A DNA stretch of 64,000 nt, from positions 124,001-188,000 of the IMG/VR virus record IMGVR_UViG_3300048927_000250. The stretch is one strand, 5' to 3'. The position numbers and the translations under genes were made by a program. Each line of letters opens with the position of its first letter. Positions within the stretch are counted from its first letter, which is position 1. Below, one piece after another: positions 23,808 to 37,714 of this stretch. The notes beneath the pieces are model-generated. The model saw nothing but the letters and a program-made list of their open reading frames with translations, ran no database searches and was not told the origin of the DNA.

Positions 23808-24338
23808 ATGCCTGTTTCAAAGAACAACCGTAAAACCAAAAAGGTCAAAAAACAAAAAGGTTACCGCCCGGTTCGTACACTTCCGGGGTACAAGCTGGTT
23901 AAAGAAACCTGCCAGAAGATTGATGACATCTTGTTCGAGACTGCAAAGCTCGCCAAGATTGTGGGTGTGATGGAAGACCAGTTCTCTCCGGAACACAAGA
24001 TTGAATCGCAAGCGCACCTGCGGGCGATTATTGAAGTGCTGGCTCCGGGTAAAGCCATTGATGCACAGGGCGTGGAAGTGGAATACGCCGCCTTCCCACT
24101 GCGTGTCTCTGCGCTGGAAAAAGAAGCGGATAAGATTGCTGCGCGTGCGCACGCAGACGACCTGGAGTTCGTCCCGATTCTGAACATGGCTGAAAATTAC
24201 CTGTCCACCCTGATTACGGGTACCGGTGAAGCCATTTCTCAACTGGCCATTCTCGTTGACACTTACGCACCACGTGAAGACGGCGTGAGCGAAGTGCTGG
24301 AAAAGCAAAAGGAAGAAACTGATGTCCAACCTGCCTGA
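23808..24338 (+). CDS. Hypothetical protein with a Lys-rich N-terminus
   Basis: 176 aa; SD AAGGA. Confidence 0.65.
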   Translation: MPVSKNNRKTKKVKKQKGYRPVRTLPGYKLVKETCQKIDDILFETAKLAKIVGVMEDQFSPEHKIESQAHLRAIIEVLAPGKAIDAQGVEVEYAAFPLRVSALEKEADKIAARAHADDLEFVPILNMAENYLSTLITGTGEAISQLAILVDTYAPREDGVSEVLEKQKEETDVQPA

Positions 24339-26145
24339 AGATACCCCGCCACTCCCGGCGGGTCTACGTCCGTTACCCGATACCGCATTTAAAGACGATG
24401 ATGCGGTCGTCGAAGTCGTCAGCCAGCAGCCGGAGATTGCTCAGGTGGCTGCTGAACCTGCTCCCCAGCAAACTGAACCTGTTGCTGATGCCCAACCCGT
24501 TCCTGAAGCGGTAACTGAAGCAACGGCGACTGCCACTGACCTACCGAAAGACGCCACCGTGTCTGACGATGATGCGCCAGTGGAACAGGCCCCAGAAGTG
24601 AGCGAAGTCGGGTTCTTCTTTGATGACGACAAAGTGGAAGGGAAAGTTGACCTTTCTCGTTCGCCATTAAAGGATGCGTCGAATAAGGCTAACTTCTCAG
24701 CGAACCTGTCTCTGCTGCGCACCACTCTGGAGGATTACTACCTCCGCGGTGAGAGCATGGGCGACATGGCGGGACTGGATGATTACAACTGGTTCCTGGC
24801 CATGCGTGATGCTATCGACTCGTCTCTCTCCGGTAAAGGTCTGACTGAAGCTGTGGTGCGTGACCAAGCGCACTGGGTGAACGAAATCGCCACCGGGAAG
24901 AAAGGGCGTGAACTTCGTCTGCGTAAGACCCTGTTCAAACGTCCTGAAGGTCAGAAGAACGGTCAGGCGTTGGTGGGCAGTCGTGCTACTGAAGCGTTCG
25001 TTACCGGTACAGGTATCGGTCACCCGGTTCAGGTTCCTCTGTGGCGCACCGGTATCTGGGTGACCATGCGTACCCCGTCTATCGGTTACCTGGCCGAGAT
25101 TGACCGTGCGCTGGCGTTTGCCCGTCCTGAGCTCGGCATGGACACGTCTGGGATGTTGAACTCCAACGAAGCGTTGCTGTTCGAAGAAATCCTGGTTGAT
25201 GCTGCACTGCGTCTGGTAACGTCTACCAGCTACCCGATTGCCTCTTCGCCGCTGGAACTGAAAGAAGTCATCAGTGCCCACGACAAAGACCAGTTAATCT
25301 GGGGGATGGCTGTGGCGGCGTGGCCGGATGGTACTGACATTGCGATTCCGTGTACTGACGGTGAATGTCGTCACACTGACCGCGTCTTTGCTTCTCTGCT
25401 GCGTATGTCCTGGGTGGATGAAGGTCGTCTCACCACGGCACAACGTACCCACATGGACCGCGCGGGTACCGGTCGTGTAACGGATGAAGACCTGGAGAAA
25501 TACCAGGCTGACTTCCTGACGCACGAGAACGAGTACTTCGAGTACAAGAGTCGTCGCTTCAACTTCTTCGTTTCCACGCTGGCAGAATACTTCGCAAACG
25601 GTCGTCAATGGATTAACTCCGTGAACCGTGCGCTGGTTGAAGCCATGGGTGAAGACCTGGAAGGGAATGACCAGAAGCGTGCTGCGCTAATCAACAGCCT
25701 GATTAGTTCAGAGCAACTCTGTCGTTACGGTCACTACATCCGTAACATCGAAATACCGAACCCGGAAGATGAAGACTCCCCTGACACCATCGACGGGGAA
25801 GATGAGATTCGCGATATCCTGAAACTGCTGTCCGCAGAACCGGCTACCGTGAACGAACTGTTGCGTGCGGTGGATAGCTATATCCAGAACAGCATGGTTT
25901 CCCTCATCGCCTCCATCAACGTGCCGTGCTCGGCGTGTGGTAAACTTCACCTGAACCGTGGAGGTGAAGCACGACTGATTCTGCCGTTCAATGCTGCACT
26001 GGGTTTTTTTACCCTTGCGCAACGCAAGATGGTTCACGCGGGGATTCAGCCGCTGACCGACCTTTCGACGTTAGGCATCCGGAATTTTGTACAACAGGTC
26101 TCGGCGAACGCGTCTATGGCGTCCTCGAGTCTGCCGGTAGCTTAA
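24322..26145 (+). CDS. Conserved zinc-binding protein (phiKZ gp77-like); putative tail/baseplate-hub assembly chaperone
   Basis: 607 aa; CxxxxCxH and CxxC pairs; slippery GGGTTTTTTT near the 3' end. Confidence 0.65.
   Translation: MSNLPEDTPPLPAGLRPLPDTAFKDDDAVVEVVSQQPEIAQVAAEPAPQQTEPVADAQPVPEAVTEATATATDLPKDATVSDDDAPVEQAPEVSEVGFFFDDDKVEGKVDLSRSPLKDASNKANFSANLSLLRTTLEDYYLRGESMGDMAGLDDYNWFLAMRDAIDSSLSGKGLTEAVVRDQAHWVNEIATGKKGRELRLRKTLFKRPEGQKNGQALVGSRATEAFVTGTGIGHPVQVPLWRTGIWVTMRTPSIGYLAEIDRALAFARPELGMDTSGMLNSNEALLFEEILVDAALRLVTSTSYPIASSPLELKEVISAHDKDQLIWGMAVAAWPDGTDIAIPCTDGECRHTDRVFASLLRMSWVDEGRLTTAQRTHMDRAGTGRVTDEDLEKYQADFLTHENEYFEYKSRRFNFFVSTLAEYFANGRQWINSVNRALVEAMGEDLEGNDQKRAALINSLISSEQLCRYGHYIRNIEIPNPEDEDSPDTIDGEDEIRDILKLLSAEPATVNELLRAVDSYIQNSMVSLIASINVPCSACGKLHLNRGGEARLILPFNAALGFFTLAQRKMVHAGIQPLTDLSTLGIRNFVQQVSANASMASSSLPVA
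26001..26033 (+). other. Candidate -1 programmed ribosomal frameshift site
   Basis: GGGTTTTTTT followed by hairpin CTTGCG-CAA-CGCAAG; the -1 frame is open from 25968 to 26489. Confidence 0.7.
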
Positions 26146-26489
26146 CGGAGTTTCAGGCCAAGTTAGCGCTGCGACGGGCGTACGACCTGGACCACCGTAT
26201 CTACACCCCCGAATACGCCGCCAAACATCCGTACGCTCCCATGGAGATGCATAAGACGGAGATGGCGGCTAACCGAGGCATGTACGAGGCGTTAGTGGAA
26301 AAGTTCCGTGTCTACCGCATGAAGGACCTCTACGGGTATAACTACTCCGAGTTCCTTCTGTTACCGAATGACACGGCCCAGATGTTAATCCGGGATGCCA
26401 TCAAAGCGTCTGCTGCGGAAAACAAGCAAGACGCTGCTGCGGCGCAACTGGCTGATGAGTTGCGTAAGTTAGAAGGGAATAAGCAATAG
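26010..26489 (+). CDS. phiKZ gp76-like ORF, probably the -1 frameshift extension of the upstream gene
   Basis: Frame open well upstream of the first ATG (26241), which has no SD; ends immediately before a terminator. Confidence 0.6.
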   Translation, partial: YPCATQDGSRGDSAADRPFDVRHPEFCTTGLGERVYGVLESAGSLTEFQAKLALRRAYDLDHRIYTPEYAAKHPYAPMEMHKTEMAANRGMYEALVEKFRVYRMKDLYGYNYSEFLLLPNDTAQMLIRDAIKASAAENKQDAAAAQLADELRKLEGNKQ

Positions 26490-26527
26490 CCTTACCGTAC
26501 CTTCGGGTACGGTAAGGTTCTTTTATG
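26490..26527 (+). terminator. Intrinsic terminator
   Basis: CCTTACCGTACC-TTCG-GGTACGGTAAGG followed by TTCTTTTATG. Confidence 0.9.
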
Positions 26528-26573
26528 CGACTTCTTATAGCACTGGCAAAGTTAAGGTGAGGGAGCCTCTATA

Positions 26574-27206
26574 ATGGAAGCTAATCTGATGGGGTCGAGA
26601 AAGAAATCAAACGTCGTCGTGGACATTGACTTCGCAAACGCTGTAGTGGGCGACAAAACCCTGAGCAGTAAGATAGGTGGGTATAACTTCGTCCGGAAGG
26701 CCGGGACCGGTACCGCAAACGGCGATGATGGCGTTGTGGATGACCCAACGTACGGGAAGTGTTACCGTTTTAATGGCGTGACGTATTTTGAGGACGCAAT
26801 ATTACGTCCAGGTATCTGGAATAAAGAGTATCGCATCACCATCAGCTTCCAGAGTTTGTCCTCTCGGGCAGAGGCGGTATTCGGTACCGGGGATTATAAC
26901 CCTTCTCCTCAAGTAGGGTCGTCACTTAGCATTAACAACTACGCCAGCCAATGGATACAGTACTTCATGTGCAGTGGGGCTTACCAGAGGGTGCTATTAG
27001 ACGGTGCACGTCCAGCTGTCATGGAAACTCTGGTAATCACCCGGCGTTCAACGGGGATAACCATCGAGAGTACTCGAACGGGGCAAAAGAACACCTACCC
27101 AGACTTTAATACAGGTGGTGAAACCTTCTGGCGTATTGGCGTGGCTCAGAACCCGGCATACTGCTTCACGGGACTGTTAAAGTCGTTGAAGATTGAGTTG
27201 CTCTAG
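26574..27206 (+). CDS. Putative virion protein, ConA/LamG-like beta-sandwich, paralog 1
   Basis: Shares DxDFAxAxVGxK, GANGDxGVVxDPTYGKCYxFxG and FTGxLKSL with the next gene. Confidence 0.6.
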   Translation: MEANLMGSRKKSNVVVDIDFANAVVGDKTLSSKIGGYNFVRKAGTGTANGDDGVVDDPTYGKCYRFNGVTYFEDAILRPGIWNKEYRITISFQSLSSRAEAVFGTGDYNPSPQVGSSLSINNYASQWIQYFMCSGAYQRVLLDGARPAVMETLVITRRSTGITIESTRTGQKNTYPDFNTGGETFWRIGVAQNPAYCFTGLLKSLKIELL

Positions 27207-27217
27207 GGGAGTCAAAG

Positions 27218-27859
27218 ATGCTTGAATCTAACTTGTTCGGCGGGAAACACAAAAAAGTATTGTTGGACATCAACTTTGCTGATGCGGCCGTGGGCAGTAA
27301 AGTTATCACCGACTCTGGTCCCCTGGGGATACCGCTCACGCGTGCTGTCGTTGCAGGTGGTGCGAATGGAGACGGCGTAGTCAACGACCCCACGTATGGG
27401 AAGTGCTACTACTTCGATGGGTACGCGTATTTTCAGAACCTGTCACCGGTGTTGAATTTGGCGGACAGTAACTACGAGTTGACAATAGAGTTAGCGTTGG
27501 TGGGTAGTGGATTCATGTGCACGTTCGCTACGGGTGACTACCCGGCTGCCAACAACATCAAGAAAGGACTGGAGTTACTGCACAACCAACTCAGTCAGCC
27601 TATTCAGGTCTTCCAGACCACGGACGCGGGAGCGTTTCAACGCACTTACGGTTATGGTAGTGCCAATAACCAAATGTTGAAGCTCACGGTAAAAGAGGAC
27701 AGTACGAACATTACCGTCTCCAACAATCAAAACAGTAACCAGGCTGTTGCTGCCAGATTCCGGACTGGGGGTGATTCGTACCTGATGTTGGGGACGTCTC
27801 ACGGACTGGCTAACCGTTTCACGGGATACTTGAAGTCTCTACGGGTTGTCAAACTGTAA
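27218..27859 (+). CDS. Putative virion protein, ConA/LamG-like beta-sandwich, paralog 2
   Basis: Tandem paralog of 26574..27206; SD GGAG. Confidence 0.6.
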   Translation: MLESNLFGGKHKKVLLDINFADAAVGSKVITDSGPLGIPLTRAVVAGGANGDGVVNDPTYGKCYYFDGYAYFQNLSPVLNLADSNYELTIELALVGSGFMCTFATGDYPAANNIKKGLELLHNQLSQPIQVFQTTDAGAFQRTYGYGSANNQMLKLTVKEDSTNITVSNNQNSNQAVAARFRTGGDSYLMLGTSHGLANRFTGYLKSLRVVKL

Positions 27860-27865
27860 CGAAAC

Positions 27866-27900
27866 AAAAAAAAAGAAAGAGGGGCGAAAGCCCCTCTTTT
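27866..27900. terminator. Bidirectional terminator
   Basis: AAAGAGGGGC-GAAA-GCCCCTCTTT flanked by A and T tracts. Confidence 0.9.
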
Positions 27901-30962: not shown

Positions 30963-32951
30963 CTAGACCACTTTCACCCCTTTCGTCTGCCAGTACTGAT
31001 TCCACTTCTTGATGTTCAAGAACAGTGGGTCAAATGAATGGTTAGGACGAATGCGGTGAATGTAAGATTTCGGGTCAGCTATCATCTCGAACTGTCGTTC
31101 GTACGCCGCTTTCGCAGACAAACTACGACCGCTCATGATGCGGGTTTGTGGTGCAAAGTGAATCCCGGTCCCGAGCTTCGGCAGACGGAAGTCGCCGTTT
31201 TTCGGGTCACGACCCATCATGCAGTACAACACCAGTTCCACAATACCCAAGTTGACCGAGAACTTACGGTTGGTCATGTCACACACCAGTCGAATTGCAC
31301 CGGCCAAGTTCACGGGGTCGGTCAGGTCACGGCGGAGTAACTCTTTACCGATGTCCGACGACATGAAGATGACCGATTTCAACTCTTCCATTTGCTCCAG
31401 GGTTGAACCACGGCGTTCCGGGAAGCGCAGGATGATTTCTGCGTTGTCCCAGTTCATCAGGTCAACCTCAATATATTTGCCGACGGTTTGGAAACCAAAG
31501 TCGCGCATATATTGGAGGAACTCTTTGGTCAGGAATGGGCGGTAGGAGCCACGGCTGACAGGGACGATGTCCATTTTCTGGTTCTTATCCCCGTTATCAA
31601 TAACGAGAACAATTTCCTTAATCGTGGAGATACGGGACAAGTCACCGTCTTTCAGTTCGTTAAAGATGGAGATATCTGCCAGACGGAAGATGTCACTCAC
31701 ATCGAAACGGACTTTAACGTGCTTGCCCCAAAGGTCCCTGGAAAGCGTTATCTCCTTATCGTCACCGAGGTTGGAGATGTACTTCAGTTCGTGGTCATGA
31801 ATCACGTACGATTCTGACTCCGCAGAGACCAGGTGGTGTTTGGTGGAAATAACGTCCTGTGATACGGCTTCGTTCTGGGTAACCGTCAGGGCGAAACCAG
31901 GGTTGGTGTCGTCCTGTACCCGCGACGCATTCTCACAAAGACAATACTTACACACCACACCGTCTTCTGGATGCTGGCACTTCGACGGTGTACGCATTCG
32001 AATCACGGTACCCACTAAGTGGTTATCGTAACCTTTCCCGCGCACCATCTTCAAATCGCCATCCCGGTCAAAGTAATACTTGCCCGGTAAGACGTGTTCC
32101 AGGTCATCCTTCGTGACTTTCCACGGGATGGTTTCTTTCGACCCACAGTCTTGCTGGTCAACGCCGTGTACGACGTAGGTTATCAGCTGAAGTTCGCGGT
32201 TATAGTACTCAGTACGTTTAACCGGTTCACTCGTGGCTAACTGGGCTTGTGCAGCAGAGCAACGGTCCATTGCGGAGAAGGACAGTCGTTTCAGGTGTTC
32301 CGAGAACCCAACCGGAATCGGGTTAACGAAGATACGCTGGTTAATCTCGCTACGGAAGCCCACCTTGTCGACCACCTGTAACAGCTGACCGGTTTTGGTC
32401 ATCGAGTTACGGTGTGGAATGGCCAGGTTATTGTGGTTCAGGCTCGGGTCATGGGAGAGGATATACACGAACTCTTTATAGCCGTTCGAGATATCGCGTT
32501 TCCCGGTTATCGGCCGTTCACGAATCTCCTTCAATTGTGGATGGCGGTGAATCTCCAGGAAGTCGAGGGCGTCGAGTGTGGTTTGGAACTCTTCGCCATC
32601 GGTTGCAATCGCATTGTGCAGCGCTTGCGTTATCCCGGCGTTGATTTTGTAAACGTTCTGGCGGTCTTCCAGCGGATACTCCGCATAGACCTGTTCAGCA
32701 GCACGTTGGTGCAGCTTGTTCTCCAGACCTTTACTCAACGGTTCACCGTAGACGTGGTTCTTAATGCAGAGCGGTATCGACGGGTACTGACGATGATACT
32801 CCCAGAAATACCAACTGATTAAGGTTTGTGGGAAGTCAGCAATGATTTCCCCGTCGGCAAAGATTAGGGCGATAGGCTCGAGGTCATCGAGCCGTGCCCA
32901 TATTTGTCGCTCACTCCAATGCAGAATATCATCGGCGTAGAAAGTGCGCAT
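30963..32951 (-). CDS. Non-virion RNA polymerase beta' C-terminal subunit (phiKZ gp74-like)
   Basis: VGFRSEI, DCGS, RTPSKC...VCKYC zinc site, trigger-loop-like ISTKH. Confidence 0.9.
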   Translation of the reverse strand: MRTFYADDILHWSERQIWARLDDLEPIALIFADGEIIADFPQTLISWYFWEYHRQYPSIPLCIKNHVYGEPLSKGLENKLHQRAAEQVYAEYPLEDRQNVYKINAGITQALHNAIATDGEEFQTTLDALDFLEIHRHPQLKEIRERPITGKRDISNGYKEFVYILSHDPSLNHNNLAIPHRNSMTKTGQLLQVVDKVGFRSEINQRIFVNPIPVGFSEHLKRLSFSAMDRCSAAQAQLATSEPVKRTEYYNRELQLITYVVHGVDQQDCGSKETIPWKVTKDDLEHVLPGKYYFDRDGDLKMVRGKGYDNHLVGTVIRMRTPSKCQHPEDGVVCKYCLCENASRVQDDTNPGFALTVTQNEAVSQDVISTKHHLVSAESESYVIHDHELKYISNLGDDKEITLSRDLWGKHVKVRFDVSDIFRLADISIFNELKDGDLSRISTIKEIVLVIDNGDKNQKMDIVPVSRGSYRPFLTKEFLQYMRDFGFQTVGKYIEVDLMNWDNAEIILRFPERRGSTLEQMEELKSVIFMSSDIGKELLRRDLTDPVNLAGAIRLVCDMTNRKFSVNLGIVELVLYCMMGRDPKNGDFRLPKLGTGIHFAPQTRIMSGRSLSAKAAYERQFEMIADPKSYIHRIRPNHSFDPLFLNIKKWNQYWQTKGVKVV

Positions 32952-32953
32952 TC

Positions 32954-34492
32954 TTACTCCTCTTCATCGGAATAGTCGTCGTCGCTGTCGTCTTCGGAGT
33001 CGTCGTCTTCACTGGACTCTTCTTCCGTTTCAACCACGCTATCCTCAGGAACGATGTCGTCTTCTTCCTCTTCAGCTTCTTCTTCCGGGTCAATGGGTAC
33101 TGCCACCGGTTGAGCCACATCAGGCGGAATCCCTAAACGGTCCACGTCGAAGTACGCAAACTGAGCGCCTGCGCAATACATCGTGTTGTTCAGGTAACTC
33201 AATGCCAGGGAATTCCCGACCGGAATCTCTTCACGGTCCACAACACGCTCAATGTCAGTTGGGCGGTCTGTGTTCATGATGTTACTGAAGATTTGATACA
33301 AGGCTTTCGGGTTGTTCGGACGGTCTACCTGGTCGGCCATATACTCGCCACCCAGAATACCTGCCTGGTTACGTACCTCGGCCTCACCCATCAGACGGAT
33401 TGCCTGATAACGCCACGGGAGTGCATGGCGGTCTTTCTGCGACATCTTCGCCGGAACCCCATGAACCTGGCGACGCGGTGCATCGACGGCGGACCAGTCG
33501 TGACCCGTTTTCTCCAGGACAATCATGTAGTTAGCACCGATACGAATCTTGCTGCGTGTACGACGGAGGTCACCCTTCTCGTTGTAGAACGTTACCGGAC
33601 CGTAATCTGACGGGAACCGGTCTTCGATGTCACCTACGCCTTCCACCCCGATGTTCTGAGTGTGGGACGGTAAGTAAATGTACATCATGTCTTCAACGAC
33701 CGAGTTCACATGACGCTTCACGCGGCGAATGTCGTTACCCATCCCGTTGAACTCAATCAACTTATCGTAGAACGGTTTGGACAACACTTCGTAGAACGAC
33801 ATCAGCAGTTTGTACGCTTCCCGATAGCCATCGTCAGAACTGTCACGTTTAATCATTTCACGGACGCGTTCTTCCATGCGCATACACTGGAAGTTGTAAT
33901 ACTGCTCGAACACTTTCGGCGGGTTCATACGGTTGATGGAGACAACTGGAGCAGACAACACTTCAGCTACCACGCCGTATTGGTCCATCGGCATTTGTTC
34001 GCGCTTCAGCACTTTACAAATAACCCCTTTGTCACCCCAGCACCCGGTTGCTTTGAACCCGATGGTTGGTACGACGTCGTAGGTGTATTTGATGACGATA
34101 CGGCAGGTGTTCAGCTGCTGGCCGTTGTAGTTAGGGACCAGCTTCAGGCGACCCAGTCCTGGCATCTCACTGGTGGCACCCGCAGAGTCACGAATCAGAC
34201 GCGAGAACTTCTTAGAGAACTTCGGCGTCTTGTTGACCTTACGGTTGTCACGGATGATTTTATCGTAGGCGTCCAGGATACGCTTGTGATACTGACGACG
34301 GGCGTTATCGAAACGCGTTACGTCATCGGTTGGCGTCATCCCTTGTTCTTCCGGCGTCGGCTGCTGTTCCAGCGGGTCGTTTTCCGGTTTCCAGACTTCC
34401 ACGTCAATCACACGAGCATTGCGGGTGTGCGCCTCAATGTAGACGAATTCATCGAAGAAGTAATCGAGTTGCATAATATATTTAGGTGACAA
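32954..34492 (-). CDS. Non-virion RNA polymerase beta C-terminal subunit (phiKZ gp71-73-like), 3' part
   Basis: GFKATGCWGDKGVI, NRMN and RLMGEAEVR beta motifs; in frame with the upstream ORF across a single TAG. Confidence 0.85.
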   Translation of the reverse strand: MSPKYIMQLDYFFDEFVYIEAHTRNARVIDVEVWKPENDPLEQQPTPEEQGMTPTDDVTRFDNARRQYHKRILDAYDKIIRDNRKVNKTPKFSKKFSRLIRDSAGATSEMPGLGRLKLVPNYNGQQLNTCRIVIKYTYDVVPTIGFKATGCWGDKGVICKVLKREQMPMDQYGVVAEVLSAPVVSINRMNPPKVFEQYYNFQCMRMEERVREMIKRDSSDDGYREAYKLLMSFYEVLSKPFYDKLIEFNGMGNDIRRVKRHVNSVVEDMMYIYLPSHTQNIGVEGVGDIEDRFPSDYGPVTFYNEKGDLRRTRSKIRIGANYMIVLEKTGHDWSAVDAPRRQVHGVPAKMSQKDRHALPWRYQAIRLMGEAEVRNQAGILGGEYMADQVDRPNNPKALYQIFSNIMNTDRPTDIERVVDREEIPVGNSLALSYLNNTMYCAGAQFAYFDVDRLGIPPDVAQPVAVPIDPEEEAEEEEDDIVPEDSVVETEEESSEDDDSEDDSDDDYSDEEE

Positions 34493-35251
34493 CTACAACC
34501 CACCCAGGATATCGTCGTGCTTACGCATTGCCAACAACAAACCGTCTTGTCGAATCCTGTCACCCGGTTCCGGGATAAGTTTCTGACGGTCTATCGTACC
34601 GTTCACGTTCAACAGGTAGTGGTCTTTCGGTACGTTAATTGCCACGGTACCAAAGCCACGAGATTTTGCTCGTTCGCACCATTCGTCCATGACCACAAAT
34701 CCGTCTTCAGTAGTATACGGATGGGACATGGTGGCAGTTGTCGTCAGGAGACCTGGACGCCAGATGCCGTATTCATCAATTGACGGAGATTGCGCCAGCG
34801 TTGCCCCTGCCTGGAATGCGCCACCACGGTGGGCTTGTTCCAATGCTTTGAGGTTCAGCTTCTGCTCATATCCGAAATTGTTATGATGCGAGACGTATTT
34901 GTCCACGTGCACGATATCGTATTCTTCTTTCTTACGGTTAAACACGACGTACGTGGTGCGTGGGTTTGTTGTGAAAGCGCCAAGACCTTGCCCAACATTG
35001 AACTTTTCGATTTTTTCAATGATGTCCATTGGGTCTTTGATTTTGGTCTTCCAGGTATACTTACCATACTCGCGGCCAACTCCGGTATAAAACCGGTCGC
35101 GGGTACAGCCTTCAATCACCAACGCTTGGGGTAACTGACTACCCCACATTATCAAACGCGAGGCTGACACACCGCCCATCCATGGCAGCAAGTTACACGC
35201 CAGTCCCGTTAGTTCGGTATAGAGTTGATTCTCATTGGCTAGAGTACTCAT
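34493..35251 (-). CDS. Non-virion RNA polymerase beta C-terminal subunit, 5' part (ends at an in-frame TAG)
   Basis: NLLPW..VSASRLIMWGSQLPQA and YTTEDGFVV beta motifs; SD AAGGA. Confidence 0.85.
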   Translation of the reverse strand: MSTLANENQLYTELTGLACNLLPWMGGVSASRLIMWGSQLPQALVIEGCTRDRFYTGVGREYGKYTWKTKIKDPMDIIEKIEKFNVGQGLGAFTTNPRTTYVVFNRKKEEYDIVHVDKYVSHHNNFGYEQKLNLKALEQAHRGGAFQAGATLAQSPSIDEYGIWRPGLLTTTATMSHPYTTEDGFVVMDEWCERAKSRGFGTVAINVPKDHYLLNVNGTIDRQKLIPEPGDRIRQDGLLLAMRKHDDILGGL

Positions 35252-35286
35252 TGATAATTCCTTAGTATTGGAACACTGTCACTACG

Positions 35287-35302
35287 GTAATATATACTTT
35301 AA
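35287..35302 (-). promoter_or_regulatory. phiKZ-type early (virion RNAP) promoter
   Basis: TTAAAGTATATATTAC on the - strand, containing the established TATATTAC consensus. Confidence 0.75.
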
Positions 35303-35342
35303 TTCCCGTATGGTTAAACACATCCGTTGAACAGGTGGCGTT

Positions 35343-35690
35343 ATGTCCGAAGTTAACACCCTCATGGTAAACCCGGGCTCAGCCTGGTATTACCGCCCAT
35401 CATGGTACGCGACCATTGAAGACCACATGTACCTGTTTCGCGATACCACCAACTCCGAATTAGTAACGGTAGCGGATATTGACCGCCATCGTTACGAAGC
35501 TGATTTCTACGGTTATCTGCGAGACGTACACGAAATCAAACAACCGCAATACTGGTACGTGATTCTGCGAACCAATCACATGACCTCACCGCAAGAATTT
35601 GGGGCGGATAACCAGGCAATCTACTTACCGAAAACGGCAGTGGTTGACCGGGTTATGGAGCTGTTCAAAACCGCAAAAGGAATTGGGTGA
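35343..35690 (+). CDS. LysM-like baseplate wedge protein (T4 gp53 / P2 gpX type), tentative
   Basis: YWYVILRTNHMTSP...IYLP resembles the LysM-type W..I...N....P...l.iP pattern. Confidence 0.5.
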   Translation: MSEVNTLMVNPGSAWYYRPSWYATIEDHMYLFRDTTNSELVTVADIDRHRYEADFYGYLRDVHEIKQPQYWYVILRTNHMTSPQEFGADNQAIYLPKTAVVDRVMELFKTAKGIG

Positions 35691-35717
35691 ATACTACATC
35701 CCATGTGGTCTCGGCGT

Positions 35718-35747
35718 AAAAAAGGAAGGGCGCAAGCCCTTCTTTTA
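35718..35747. terminator. Bidirectional terminator
   Basis: GAAGGGC-GCAA-GCCCTTC flanked by A and T tracts. Confidence 0.8.
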
Positions 35748-36077
35748 TTCTGCATTTCGGAGTGCGGTGTCGTAAAGTTGGTCCAGTCGTTTCTGACTGA
35801 AATGGTAACCCATCTTCTTAACCCGACAGTAAACCAGTTCCCGTAATTGACGGTCACGTTCTTCCGGCACCAGTGACTTCAACAATGCACCAAAATCATC
35901 CCCTTTCTTGGGGGACGTTGAACTCAAACGGAAATCAACAAATACCTCTTTCGAGAGTATCTGGGGAATGAGGGAGGGAACAACTTCCAGCTGACGACCA
36001 ATTTCCTTGTCCGTCATCCCTTTTGCTTTTAGAGCCATCACTTCCTTGCGTGTCAAATATAGCTCGATGGTAATCAC
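35745..36077 (-). CDS. Small HTH DNA-binding protein
   Basis: LKAKGMTDKEIGRQLEVVPSLI helix-turn-helix. Confidence 0.65.
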   Translation of the reverse strand: MITIELYLTRKEVMALKAKGMTDKEIGRQLEVVPSLIPQILSKEVFVDFRLSSTSPKKGDDFGALLKSLVPEERDRQLRELVYCRVKKMGYHFSQKRLDQLYDTALRNAE

Positions 36078-36080
36078 GGG

Positions 36081-36299
36081 TTATTCCTCTAATTGACCGT
36101 GTTGTTCAAAGTGCTGAATCTCTTCAACAGAAAGATTGAATACCGCAGAGAGGCTGTCTATGGGAACGCCATTCTCCAACCCATTACGCAAGTGCGTTTC
36201 CATGCGCAACCGGTGCATTTCTTTGGCGTCAATTTCCGCCTGCTTAATCAGGTCGTCGAGAGATTTCCTTAGCGGGCTAGGTTTGGGTGTTTTTGCCAT
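36081..36299 (-). CDS. Small HTH-like protein
   Basis: NGVPIDSLSAVFNLSVEEI; SD GAGGA. Confidence 0.6.
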   Translation of the reverse strand: MAKTPKPSPLRKSLDDLIKQAEIDAKEMHRLRMETHLRNGLENGVPIDSLSAVFNLSVEEIQHFEQHGQLEE

Positions 36300-36315
36300 C
36301 TTTTGGGTCCTCTAA

Positions 36316-36353
36316 GAAAGAAAAAAGAAAGAGGGGCCGAAGCCCCTCTTTTC
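36316..36353 (-). terminator. Intrinsic terminator
   Basis: AAAGAGGGG-CCGAAG-CCCCTCTTT with a U tract on the - strand. Confidence 0.85.
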
Positions 36354-36355
36354 TG

Positions 36356-37714
36356 TTAACGACGCCAGCCGCCGCGTCCACGGTCGCGACTGCGGTCATC
36401 ACGTACGGATTCACCCCAGTCACGGCTGATACCGGAGGAGGTGGTTTCACGTGCATCATCGCGTCCACGCCCGCGGTCATCTTCGCGGTCACGGCTATAG
36501 CGGTCGTCACGGTCACGTTCACGACCACGGCGGTCGTCGTAATCATCACGGCTGCGACCACGGTCACGACTGTAACGACTGTCGCGGTCATCGCGGTCGT
36601 CATCACGCCCACGTCCACCCCAGTTACCACCACGTCCACCACGGTCATCGTCACGTTCGTCACGACGTCCGCCACCCCAAGAGGCACGACGAGGTTCATC
36701 ACGGCTACCACGATTGTCCGTATAACGGTTTCCGCCACGGCTGTGCTGGTCACGGAGTTCACGACGTTCTTCACGTCCTTTCTCTTTGGCCAGACGGTCC
36801 TTCTCTTCCTTCAGCGTCCCTTCGTCCGCTTCCCCTTCGTTACCCGGCAGAGAGGATGGAATGTCTAAACGGTAATCGTTCAGCATTGACATCTCTTTCG
36901 TCCAGTTGGTCGGGATAATCCAGGCTTTCAGCGCCGGGTTATAGGACTCAAAGATTTTGAGCTGTGCGTTGATGTCTTTCGCCACACGGCTGTAGGCCAT
37001 CATTAACGCATGGAAGTTTGGAGCCACCGGTGAATTCGACCCGTAGTTGTAATGCAGGTCGGCTTCGTCGATACCCGGCAGGATGTGACGAATCAGCTTG
37101 AAGAAAGCTTCTTTGTCAGAGACCCGTGCCAGGTTCTTACCGTAGATGGCTTTACCGCCGGTGTACTCTTCATCCATCACGGGGAAGGACACGGAACACA
37201 GACGTGCCACTTCTTCGCCTTTCCAGGTACCGTTACGACGCACGAACAGGTTGATGAGGGCTTTCTCCTCACCGTCCATGTTCTTCAACAGAACGTCTTT
37301 GATACCTTTATAGGTGCGCTCGTCCGCATCTTCCATCAGACGCAGGAAGCCTTTCTGTTCGGTGGTAACCTGAGAATGCTGCTCGGTTTCCGCCGCCAGT
37401 TTGCTCATGGTCAGAATCAGTTCAGTCAGTGCGCCGTTCAAATGGTGTTGTGCCATCTTCACGGTACGTTCATGAATCAGAGACTTCTTACGAATCAGGT
37501 TCTCACCGAGCGGATGGAATGCCCAGAAGTTATCCCAGTCTGGGTCAGCCAGGAACTCTTCGGTTGGGACACGCAGTTGCTTCCCTTCGATGGTGAAGGG
37601 GATGTTAACCCCCTCCTGTTTCAGCGTTACGAAGCCGGTGTCGTCAACTGACAGTCCAATGGCAGTAAGGACTTGACCGTAAAACTTCGCAATAGGTTTC
37701 TTTTTATCGGACAT
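36356..37714 (-). CDS. Conserved Chimalliviridae core protein (phiKZ gp70-like) with an Arg/Asp-rich tail
   Basis: Lies between PicA and nvRNAP beta; AFHPLGEN motif; RD/RG low-complexity C-terminus. Confidence 0.7.
   Translation of the reverse strand: MSDKKKPIAKFYGQVLTAIGLSVDDTGFVTLKQEGVNIPFTIEGKQLRVPTEEFLADPDWDNFWAFHPLGENLIRKKSLIHERTVKMAQHHLNGALTELILTMSKLAAETEQHSQVTTEQKGFLRLMEDADERTYKGIKDVLLKNMDGEEKALINLFVRRNGTWKGEEVARLCSVSFPVMDEEYTGGKAIYGKNLARVSDKEAFFKLIRHILPGIDEADLHYNYGSNSPVAPNFHALMMAYSRVAKDINAQLKIFESYNPALKAWIIPTNWTKEMSMLNDYRLDIPSSLPGNEGEADEGTLKEEKDRLAKEKGREERRELRDQHSRGGNRYTDNRGSRDEPRRASWGGGRRDERDDDRGGRGGNWGGRGRDDDRDDRDSRYSRDRGRSRDDYDDRRGRERDRDDRYSRDREDDRGRGRDDARETTSSGISRDWGESVRDDRSRDRGRGGWRR

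What the first reader, a model, noticed from the sequence alone, without database searches (positions are those of the whole stretch)
34460..34520. Single in-frame amber codon splits the nvRNAP beta subunit
Seen: ORFs 34493..35251 and 32954..34492 are in the same frame and separated only by TAG (...KHDDILGGL*LSPKYIMQLDYFFD...). Read through, they form one 765-aa beta C-terminal subunit, with beta motifs on both sides and no intervening intron or homing-endonuclease sequence. TAG is a real stop elsewhere in this window, so the genome is not globally recoded. Possible explanations: site-specific readthrough or suppression gating late transcription; a real two-piece subunit restarting at TTG (GGGTGGG lies 6 nt upstream; a promoter-like TATATTATG follows); a laboratory amber mutant; or a sequencing error.
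Basis: partly seen in the sequence, partly recalled or inferred. Interest (0 to 1): 0.7.

Follow-up and report, generated by a model that had tools for sequence, protein, structure and literature searches.

The report
Amber codon is an assembly artefact
The stop codon that seems to split this phage RNA polymerase gene occurs only in this one metagenome contig, inside a 28-base burst of one-sided G-to-T changes, and every other data set for the same phage reads an ordinary glutamate codon, so it is almost certainly a sequencing or assembly error.

Summary
A TAG at window 34495..34493 (- strand) separates two same-frame ORFs of 252 and 512 aa. Together they are a full-length homologue of phiKZ nvRNAP subunit gp71-73 (PDB 7OGP_C, E 1e-84).

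The TAG is not a property of the phage:
- It lies in a 28-nt cluster (34471-34498) of seven substitutions private to this record. All seven hit G on the coding strand (6 G>T, 1 G>C).
- Five of the six affected codons change the protein: V252L, E253*, E258Y, M259I, E261Q.
- Logan contigs of the probable source metagenome (X1) match the window at every other base of 5.9 kb but read G at all seven positions. That restores GAG and the peptide LGGVELSPKEMMEL.
- Two other root metagenomes with the same strain (X2, X9), three runs with related strains (X3, X4, X8) and the isolates PhiEaH1 and vB_Ea277G (98.6-98.7% identical) also read GAG.
- The 252-aa product is on record on one contig only, the window's own.
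- All 40 homologues are continuous across the site.
- The genome has no tRNA gene, and TAG ends 28 of 249 long ORFs.

The "GGGTGGG" and "TATATTATG" motifs come from the same private changes. Verdict: artefact, or at most a rare defective variant. Interest is low.

The parts
32954..35251 (-). Gene for the nvRNAP beta-like C-terminal-half subunit (homologue of phiKZ gp71-73). It has 765 codons plus a stop and is interrupted in this record by one in-frame TAG.
   Evidence: Searches give the ORFs and translation. Searches show an intact 765-aa CDS at the same place in PhiEaH1 (AGX01730.1) and vB_Ea277G (WBF04838.1). One search matches 7OGP_C (PHIKZ071) at E 1e-84, residues 19-700 against 17-696. 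One search matches phrog_3295 'RNA polymerase beta subunit' at E 1e-240. One search matches PF00562 Rpb2 domain 6.
34493..34495 (-). The in-frame TAG (codon 253). It reads GAG (Glu) in every other data set.
   Evidence: One search shows the sequence. Searches show + strand position 34495 as A in the window and C in contigs of X1, X2, X3, X4, X8 and X9. One search shows GAG in both isolates. In one search it aligns with E253 of phiKZ gp71-73. In one search the column is E in 23 and D in 6 of 41 homologues.
34471..34498 (-). Cluster of seven substitutions private to this record, all at G of the coding strand (6 G>T, 1 G>C). This is the artefact itself.
   Evidence: X1 contigs differ from the window only at 34471, 34475, 34478, 34480, 34484, 34495 and 34498 across 5.9 kb; it is the only same-type transversion burst in the genome that lies in an otherwise quiet region; the coding consequences are V252L, E253*, P256 (synonymous), E258Y, M259I, E261Q.
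34493..35251 (-). Apparent 252-aa N-terminal piece, called as a separate gene in the JGI record.
   Evidence: exactly this product is on record on one contig only, JGI 3300048927 Ga0496124_0000077 (215,418 bp), which is the window's own record.
32954..34492 (-). Apparent C-terminal piece: 512 aa from TTG, or 506 aa from the ATG at 34474 as called by JGI. It holds the Rpb2 domain-6 core with the two conserved lysines (K400 and K408 in full-length numbering).
   Evidence: One search gives the 506-aa gene call. One search shows K400 and K408 invariant in 41 homologues. Searches show they correspond to phiKZ K386 and K394.
32957..33150 (-). Acidic low-complexity C-terminal tail (about 65 residues rich in E, D and S) that extends beyond the homology with phiKZ gp71-73.
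   Evidence: One search gives the translation. One search shows the alignment with gp71-73 ending at query residue 700.

Best explanation
The amber codon is an error private to this one assembled metagenome contig (JGI 3300048927, Ga0496124_0000077), not a feature of the phage. A 28-nt stretch of the contig carries seven wrong bases, all at guanines of one strand (six read as T, one as C). This is the signature of base miscalling or of oxidised-guanine damage in a template molecule that the assembler followed. One of the seven turns GAG (Glu253) into TAG. The real phage, a close relative of Erwinia phage PhiEaH1 (Iapetusvirus), encodes one uninterrupted 765-aa homologue of phiKZ nvRNAP subunit gp71-73. 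Shown: the TAG is private to this record, every other data set has GAG, the cluster's spectrum is not an evolutionary one, and the cluster is unique in the genome. Inferred: the physical cause (miscall, damaged template or assembler path choice), because the raw reads were not available.
For: (1): contigs of X1, flagged as the possible source sample, are identical to the window over 31500-37400 apart from seven positions within 34471-34498. There they read C on the + strand where the window has A (six times) or G (once). This gives GAG and the peptide LGGVELSPKEMMEL. (2): X2 and X9, other root metagenomes with the same strain and no other differences in their listed pieces, read C at 34495 and 34498. 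X3, X4 and X8, which hold related strains, do too. (3): PhiEaH1 and vB_Ea277G annotate one 765-aa CDS with GAG. (4): the 252-aa product is found on one contig only, among 153 billion gene positions; no run was listed as holding the variant 88-mer. (5): outside codons 250-262, 20 of 21 (Ea277G) or 21 of 22 (PhiEaH1) differing codons are synonymous, on both sides of the TAG. The three differences in the patch that X1 shares with the window are synonymous. The seven private ones change five of the six codons they hit. So selection has not acted on them. (6): genome-wide, private differences are mostly transitions. This is the only burst of five same-type transversions in 30 nt that has a quiet neighbourhood (4 private SNPs in the flanking 600 nt, against at least 34 for the other clusters of four or more). 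(7) All seven changes hit G of the - strand, which holds 11 G in 28 positions. By my own arithmetic, the hypergeometric probability is 330/1,184,040, about 3e-4. (8): all 40 homologues (676-776 aa) are continuous across the site. (9): no tRNA or tmRNA gene; no second copy of the gene in the genome.
Against: Raw reads of the source sample could not be inspected, because X1 is kept only as Logan contigs. The variant's read support, base qualities and strand bias are therefore unknown. X1 is only flagged as 'may be the source'. Logan contigs of X1 break at the edge of the cluster (34465-34470). This could mean that alternative words with a count of at least 2 exist in the reads, so the variant may be present in more than one read. 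That fits a systematic error or PCR duplicates, but also a real minority genome. Only 3 of the 7 changes match the 'preceding base' pattern of Illumina sequence-specific dephasing errors described in PMC3141275, so that particular error mechanism is not shown.
Confidence: 0.82

Rival explanations
1. The haplotype is real but rare: a defective phage genome in the sampled population. It would have suffered a strand-coordinated cluster of guanine mutations in vivo (for example oxidative damage of a single-stranded stretch, fixed by replication). It would be a dead end, or be carried by co-infection with wild-type phage.
For: An assembler normally reports bases that occur in reads. Logan contigs of X1 break exactly at the cluster margin, which is compatible with a branch in the read graph. 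The all-G, one-strand spectrum also fits real lesion-induced clustered mutation.
Against: The majority sequence in X1, at word depth of about 10, is the GAG form. The haplotype is seen nowhere else. It truncates the genome's only detectable copy of this nvRNAP subunit gene and adds four amino-acid changes, so it could not be propagated alone. Seven hits in 28 nt with none in the surrounding kilobases is extreme for in vivo mutation.
Confidence: 0.14
2. The TAG is functional. Either it is a site of programmed readthrough or suppression that gates late transcription, or the subunit is really made in two pieces, with translation restarting at the adjacent TTG.
For: The stop and a possible start codon are adjacent (TAG-TTG), with a G-rich run upstream. 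Beta and beta' are naturally split elsewhere in phiKZ-type polymerases (PMC8287921).
Against: The stop is absent from the same strain in three samples, and from all related strains and isolates. All 40 homologues, phiKZ gp71-73 and AR9 are continuous here. The genome has no suppressor tRNA, indeed no tRNA gene at all. The TTG is the ordinary Leu254 codon in the close relatives. The G-run and the 'TATATTATG' are partly created by the same private substitutions. Four more unconserved amino-acid changes accompany the stop.
Confidence: 0.02
3. The TAG comes from a laboratory amber mutant, or TAG is reassigned genome-wide.
For: None beyond the presence of an in-frame TAG.
Against: The record is a contig of a root metagenome, not a laboratory stock. 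An amber mutant would carry one change, not seven. TAG terminates 28 of 249 long ORFs, and the gene has a single in-frame TAG.
Confidence: 0.01

Closest known systems
Erwinia phage PhiEaH1 AGX01730.1 and Erwinia phage vB_Ea277G WBF04838.1 (Iapetusvirus), 'RNA polymerase beta subunit'
   Same: Same gene, same length (2298 nt), same neighbours, 98.6-98.7% nucleotide identity. Outside codons 250-262 there is one amino-acid difference, I102V.
   Different: They have GAG at codon 253 and the peptide GGVELSPKEMMEL. The window's record has TAG and four further replacements within ten codons.
phiKZ nvRNAP subunit gp71-73 (PDB 7OGP/7OGR chain C; PMC8287921)
   Same: Collinear homology over about 680 residues at E 1e-84. 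The double-psi beta-barrel lysines are conserved (phiKZ K386 and K394 correspond to K400 and K408 here). Glu253 aligns with Glu253.
   Different: Sequence similarity is only moderate. The Erwinia-phage protein has an additional acidic tail of about 65 residues. phiKZ gp71-73 is one chain across the site of the apparent split.
Clustered false variants from Illumina sequencing (sequence-specific runs of consecutive miscalls, Nakamura et al. 2011, PMC3141275) and G>T/G>C artefacts of oxidised guanine (my own knowledge)
   Same: A short run of consecutive wrong bases at one place, all on one strand and of one type. It coincides with contig breaks in other assemblies of the same locus.
   Different: The platform and reads are unknown. 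Only 3 of 7 changes match the 'copy of a preceding base' pattern of dephasing errors. No long inverted repeat lies nearby.
Naturally split beta/beta' subunits of jumbo-phage RNA polymerases
   Same: The gene product is itself one half of a naturally split beta subunit.
   Different: Natural split points are conserved among relatives. This one is found in no relative.

Membership tests
phiKZ-type non-virion RNAP, beta-like C-terminal-half subunit (gp71-73 family) | End-to-end sequence homology with phiKZ gp71-73 | tested here: met
   7OGP_C at E 1e-84, query 19-700 against chain 17-696. AR9 nvRNAP 7S00_C at E 4.8e-16; phrog_3295 at E 1e-240.
phiKZ-type non-virion RNAP, beta-like C-terminal-half subunit (gp71-73 family) | RNAP beta catalytic-core domain (Rpb2 domain 6) with the two conserved DNA-contacting lysines of the double-psi beta-barrel | tested here: met
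   PF00562 at 24.6 bits, above the 23.4 cut-off. K400 and K408 are invariant in 41 homologues; they align with phiKZ K386 and K394.
phiKZ-type non-virion RNAP, beta-like C-terminal-half subunit (gp71-73 family) | Belongs to the non-virion rather than the virion polymerase set, and assembles with the other four subunits | tested here: inconclusive
   The best solved matches are both nvRNAPs. The virion paralogue and the partner subunits of this genome were not examined. One search found no second copy at its sensitivity.
Programmed stop-codon readthrough or suppression | The stop codon is conserved at the site in relatives | tested here: not met
   GAG is found in the same strain (X1, X2, X9), in related strains (X3, X4, X8) and in both isolates. 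No stop is present in any of 40 homologues.
Programmed stop-codon readthrough or suppression | A suppressor tRNA (CUA anticodon) is available from the phage | tested here: not met
   ARAGORN finds no tRNA or tmRNA gene in the 215,418-bp genome. Host tRNAs were not examined.
Naturally split gene (two-piece subunit) | The split point and an independent start are conserved in relatives | tested here: not met
   all relatives are 676-776 aa and continuous. The only short entry (P0005, 506 aa) is the window's own. The TTG is the Leu254 codon in the close relatives.
Stop-codon reassignment (TAG recoded) | In-frame TAG in many genes, and TAG not used as a terminator | tested here: not met
   TAG ends 28 of 249 ORFs of 150 aa or more; the gene has a single TAG.
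Sequencing or assembly artefact | Private to one assembly, and not reproduced by another assembly of the likely source or by samples with the same strain | tested here: met
Sequencing or assembly artefact | A substitution pattern that does not look evolutionary: clustered, one type, one strand, not filtered by selection | tested here: met
   six G>T and one G>C on one strand in 28 nt, with five of six affected codons changed, against 20 of 21 synonymous elsewhere in the gene.
Sequencing or assembly artefact | Raw reads show low quality, low support or strand bias for the variant | not testable with these tools
   X1 is held only as Logan contigs. Raw reads are served only for unrelated runs of 2026.

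The most novel reading that the evidence does not exclude
The seven-change haplotype is a real molecule from the sampled population. It would be a jumbo-phage genome carrying an in vivo, strand-coordinated burst of guanine mutations (kataegis-like, for example oxidative damage to a transiently single-stranded stretch) that knocked out an nvRNAP subunit. Such a genome would be either a dead end or maintained by complementation in co-infections.
Probability: 0.1. Interest if true: 0.3.

Novelty: not a real feature. Interest (0 to 1): 0.05.

Why it matters
It matters mainly as a caution. An in-frame amber in a jumbo-phage RNA polymerase subunit would suggest translational gating of transcription or a new split point. 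Here it is one of seven clustered wrong bases in a single metagenome contig. The JGI gene calls for this record (252 aa and 506 aa) are therefore two fragments of one 765-aa protein. Downstream catalogues that count 'split' RNAP subunits, or in-frame stops as signs of recoding, would be misled. The check used here is quick and can be reused: compare the contig with an independent assembly of the same sample and with isolates about 98% identical, then look at the spectrum and the coding effect of the private differences.

Tried and rejected
- **Runs holding the variant.** I searched public runs for the variant 88-mer, window 34441-34528. None was listed. This is weak evidence, because only 4 sampled words were available.
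- **Exact-pattern scans.** A degenerate pattern covering both the TAG and GAG forms found no matches in JGI metagenome contigs or IMG/VR. The window's own record is left out of those scans, so they gave no independent JGI assembly to compare.
- **Protein-seeded scans.** The same two collections yielded no relative.
- **Ectopic donor for a gene-conversion patch.** No 12-mer of the variant segment occurs elsewhere in the genome.
- **Inverted repeats.** I looked for repeats that could explain a sequence-specific sequencing failure and found only short, weak ones.
- **Illumina dephasing pattern.** The errors described in PMC3141275 copy a preceding base. Only 3 of the 7 changes fit, so that specific mechanism is not claimed.
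- **Suppressor tRNA.** None was found.
- **Second copy of the gene.** None was found.
- **Not run.** I ran no structure prediction, fold search or complex prediction, because the question was settled at the sequence level.

Full report
**Observation**

On the - strand of the window, TAG lies at 34495..34493. It sits between an ORF of 252 aa (34493..35251, ATG start) and an ORF of 512 aa (32954..34492, TTG start). Both are in the same frame and nothing lies between them.

**What the gene is**

I used the intact protein of a close relative (P0001) as a proxy.
- It matches chain C of the phiKZ non-virion RNA polymerase structure (7OGP, PHIKZ071 = gp71-73) collinearly. Residues 19-700 align with 17-696 at E 1e-84.
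- It matches the corresponding AR9 nvRNAP chain (7S00_C) more weakly, and cellular beta subunits over the catalytic core.
- PHROGs gives phrog_3295 'RNA polymerase beta subunit' at E 1e-240.
- Pfam gives Rpb2 domain 6, just above its cut-off, in the C-terminal piece.
- The two lysines that the phiKZ structure paper names as DNA-contacting residues of the gp71-73 double-psi beta-barrel (K386 and K394; PMC8287921) align with K400 and K408 here. Both are invariant in 41 homologues.

The assignment to the non-virion rather than the virion enzyme rests only on the best matches.

**Relatives**

The window belongs to a 215,418-bp virus record. That record is contig Ga0496124_0000077 of JGI metagenome 3300048927.

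Two isolates match the gene at 98.6-98.7% identity over all 2298 nt: Erwinia phage PhiEaH1 and Erwinia phage vB_Ea277G (Iapetusvirus). Both annotate one uninterrupted 765-aa CDS. At the position of the TAG they have GAG.

The same alignment shows that the window differs from them at 10 positions within 33 nt around the TAG. The rest of the gene differs at about 1%.

**Independent reads of the same strain**

Public runs holding this DNA were found, and their Logan contigs were laid on the window.
- **X1** is a root metagenome flagged as the possible source. Its contigs are identical to the window over 31500-37400 except at seven positions: 34471, 34475, 34478, 34480, 34484, 34495 and 34498. At six of them X1 has C on the + strand where the window has A. 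At 34471 it has C where the window has G.
- **X2 and X9** are other root metagenomes. They have no other differences in their listed pieces, so they hold the same strain. Both read C at 34495 and 34498. X2's contig continues with the relatives' sequence beyond 34481.
- **X3, X4 and X8** hold related strains, with about 2% differences. They read C at these positions too.

Translated on the coding strand, the X1 version gives LGGVELSPKEMMEL, exactly the peptide of the isolates. Of the ten differences from the isolates, three are shared with X1 (34487, 34499, 34502) and all three are synonymous. The seven private ones give V252L, E253*, P256 (synonymous), E258Y (two changes), M259I and E261Q.

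**Is the cluster more than chance?**

- I compared the whole genome with both isolates. There are 3192 positions where the window's genome differs from both, and they are mostly transitions.
- Dense patches of differences exist elsewhere, but they lie in broad mosaic regions with mixed spectra.
- The patch at genome 158,471-158,498 is the only burst of five same-type transversions within 30 nt that lies in a quiet region. It has 4 private differences in the flanking 600 nt, against at least 34 for every other cluster of four or more.
- All seven private changes hit guanines of the coding strand: six G>T and one G>C. That stretch holds 11 G in 28 positions, so the chance that seven changed positions are all G is 330/1,184,040, about 3e-4. 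This is my own arithmetic.
- Outside codons 250-262, 20 of 21 (Ea277G) or 21 of 22 (PhiEaH1) differing codons are synonymous, on both sides of the TAG. Both halves of the gene are therefore under purifying selection, while the private changes are not filtered at all.

**Is the TAG form seen anywhere else?**

- The exact 252-aa product is on record on one contig only, the window's own.
- No run was listed for the variant 88-mer, though only four sampled words were available.
- Scans of IMG/VR and JGI metagenome contigs found nothing further.
- A protein search returned 41 proteins. Forty are 676-776 aa long and run continuously across the site. The only short entry, at 506 aa, comes from the window's own contig.
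- The alignment column at residue 253 is E in 23 and D in 6 of 41 sequences, and it aligns with E253 in phiKZ.

**Tests of the interesting readings**

- ARAGORN finds no tRNA or tmRNA gene in the genome, so there is no phage-encoded suppressor.
- TAG ends 28 of 249 long ORFs, so TAG is not recoded.
- There is no detectable second copy of the gene.
- The TTG after the stop is the normal Leu254 codon of the close relatives.
- The 'GGGTGGG' run and the 'TATATTATG' box exist only because of the private G>T changes. The same strain reads GGGTGGGGTGG and GAGATGATGG. The local GC dip to 0.33 has the same cause.
- The record comes from a root metagenome, so a laboratory amber mutant is excluded.

**Most likely mechanism**

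The amber is one of seven wrong bases in a 28-nt stretch of one assembled contig. A one-strand, guanine-only pattern ending in T or C fits either of two causes. One is base miscalling, since G/T confusion is a common Illumina error. The other is oxidised guanines in a template molecule that was amplified and then followed by the assembler. Both causes rest on my own knowledge and were not tested here.

Runs of consecutive, sequence-specific miscalls that create false SNPs and break assemblies are documented (PMC3141275). Logan contigs from X1 and X2 do end at this very spot, at 34465-34470. However, only 3 of the 7 changes match the dephasing pattern described there, and no strong inverted repeat lies nearby. 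I therefore do not name the exact error process.

The contig breaks could also mean that the variant words occur more than once in the reads. That leaves room, about 0.14, for a real but rare and defective genome in the sample. A functional amber, whether by readthrough or as a two-piece subunit, is given about 0.02.

**What could not be done**

Inspecting them is the single decisive step.

**Verdict**

The gene is an ordinary, intact member of the gp71-73 family of jumbo-phage nvRNAP subunits, nearly identical to those of PhiEaH1 and vB_Ea277G. Interest is low.

Noticed in passing
window 24400-27900 (genome 148.4-151.9 kb); also genome 13-18.6 kb, 21.6-33.4 kb and 196-199 kb: These regions are much more diverged from PhiEaH1 and vB_Ea277G than the roughly 98% background, with up to 16-19 private differences per 35 nt and a mixed spectrum. 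In the window the patch covers two tandem paralogous genes, 26574..27206 and 27218..27859 (+), both matching phrog_6011 'virion structural protein'. It reaches into the 607-aa ORF 24322..26145 (phrog_4585, unknown function). This looks like mosaic exchange of structural, possibly host-range, modules.
   Followed up: partly
window 36321-36352 (- strand); similar copies at window 27869-27900 and genome 59726-59757: A 32-nt element appears as a loose-ended piece in several runs' contigs. On the - strand it is a GC-rich hairpin (GAGGGGC-TTCG-GCCCCTC) followed by a T-run. That makes it an intrinsic-terminator-like element, located between the 452-aa and 72-aa genes. Near-identical copies elsewhere explain the contig 'joint' reported in X1.
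   Followed up: partly
window 32957-33150 (- strand): The RNAP subunit ends in an acidic tail of about 65 residues rich in E, D and S. phiKZ gp71-73 has no counterpart to it. The two Erwinia isolates have it too. Its low-complexity DNA attracts unrelated contigs in the read-laying output.
   Followed up: no
whole genome G000 (215,418 bp): ARAGORN finds no tRNA or tmRNA gene in this jumbo-phage genome. The phage, or strains about 98% identical to it, is present in several root metagenomes and in metatranscriptomic libraries of a coded organism B (X4-X7), so the lineage occurs in several plant-root samples.
   Followed up: no
window 34156-34177 and 34465-34481: Logan contigs of independent runs (X1, X2, X9) break at the same places in this gene. 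This suggests locally poor coverage or a graph branch that recurs across libraries. The cause was not determined.
   Followed up: partly
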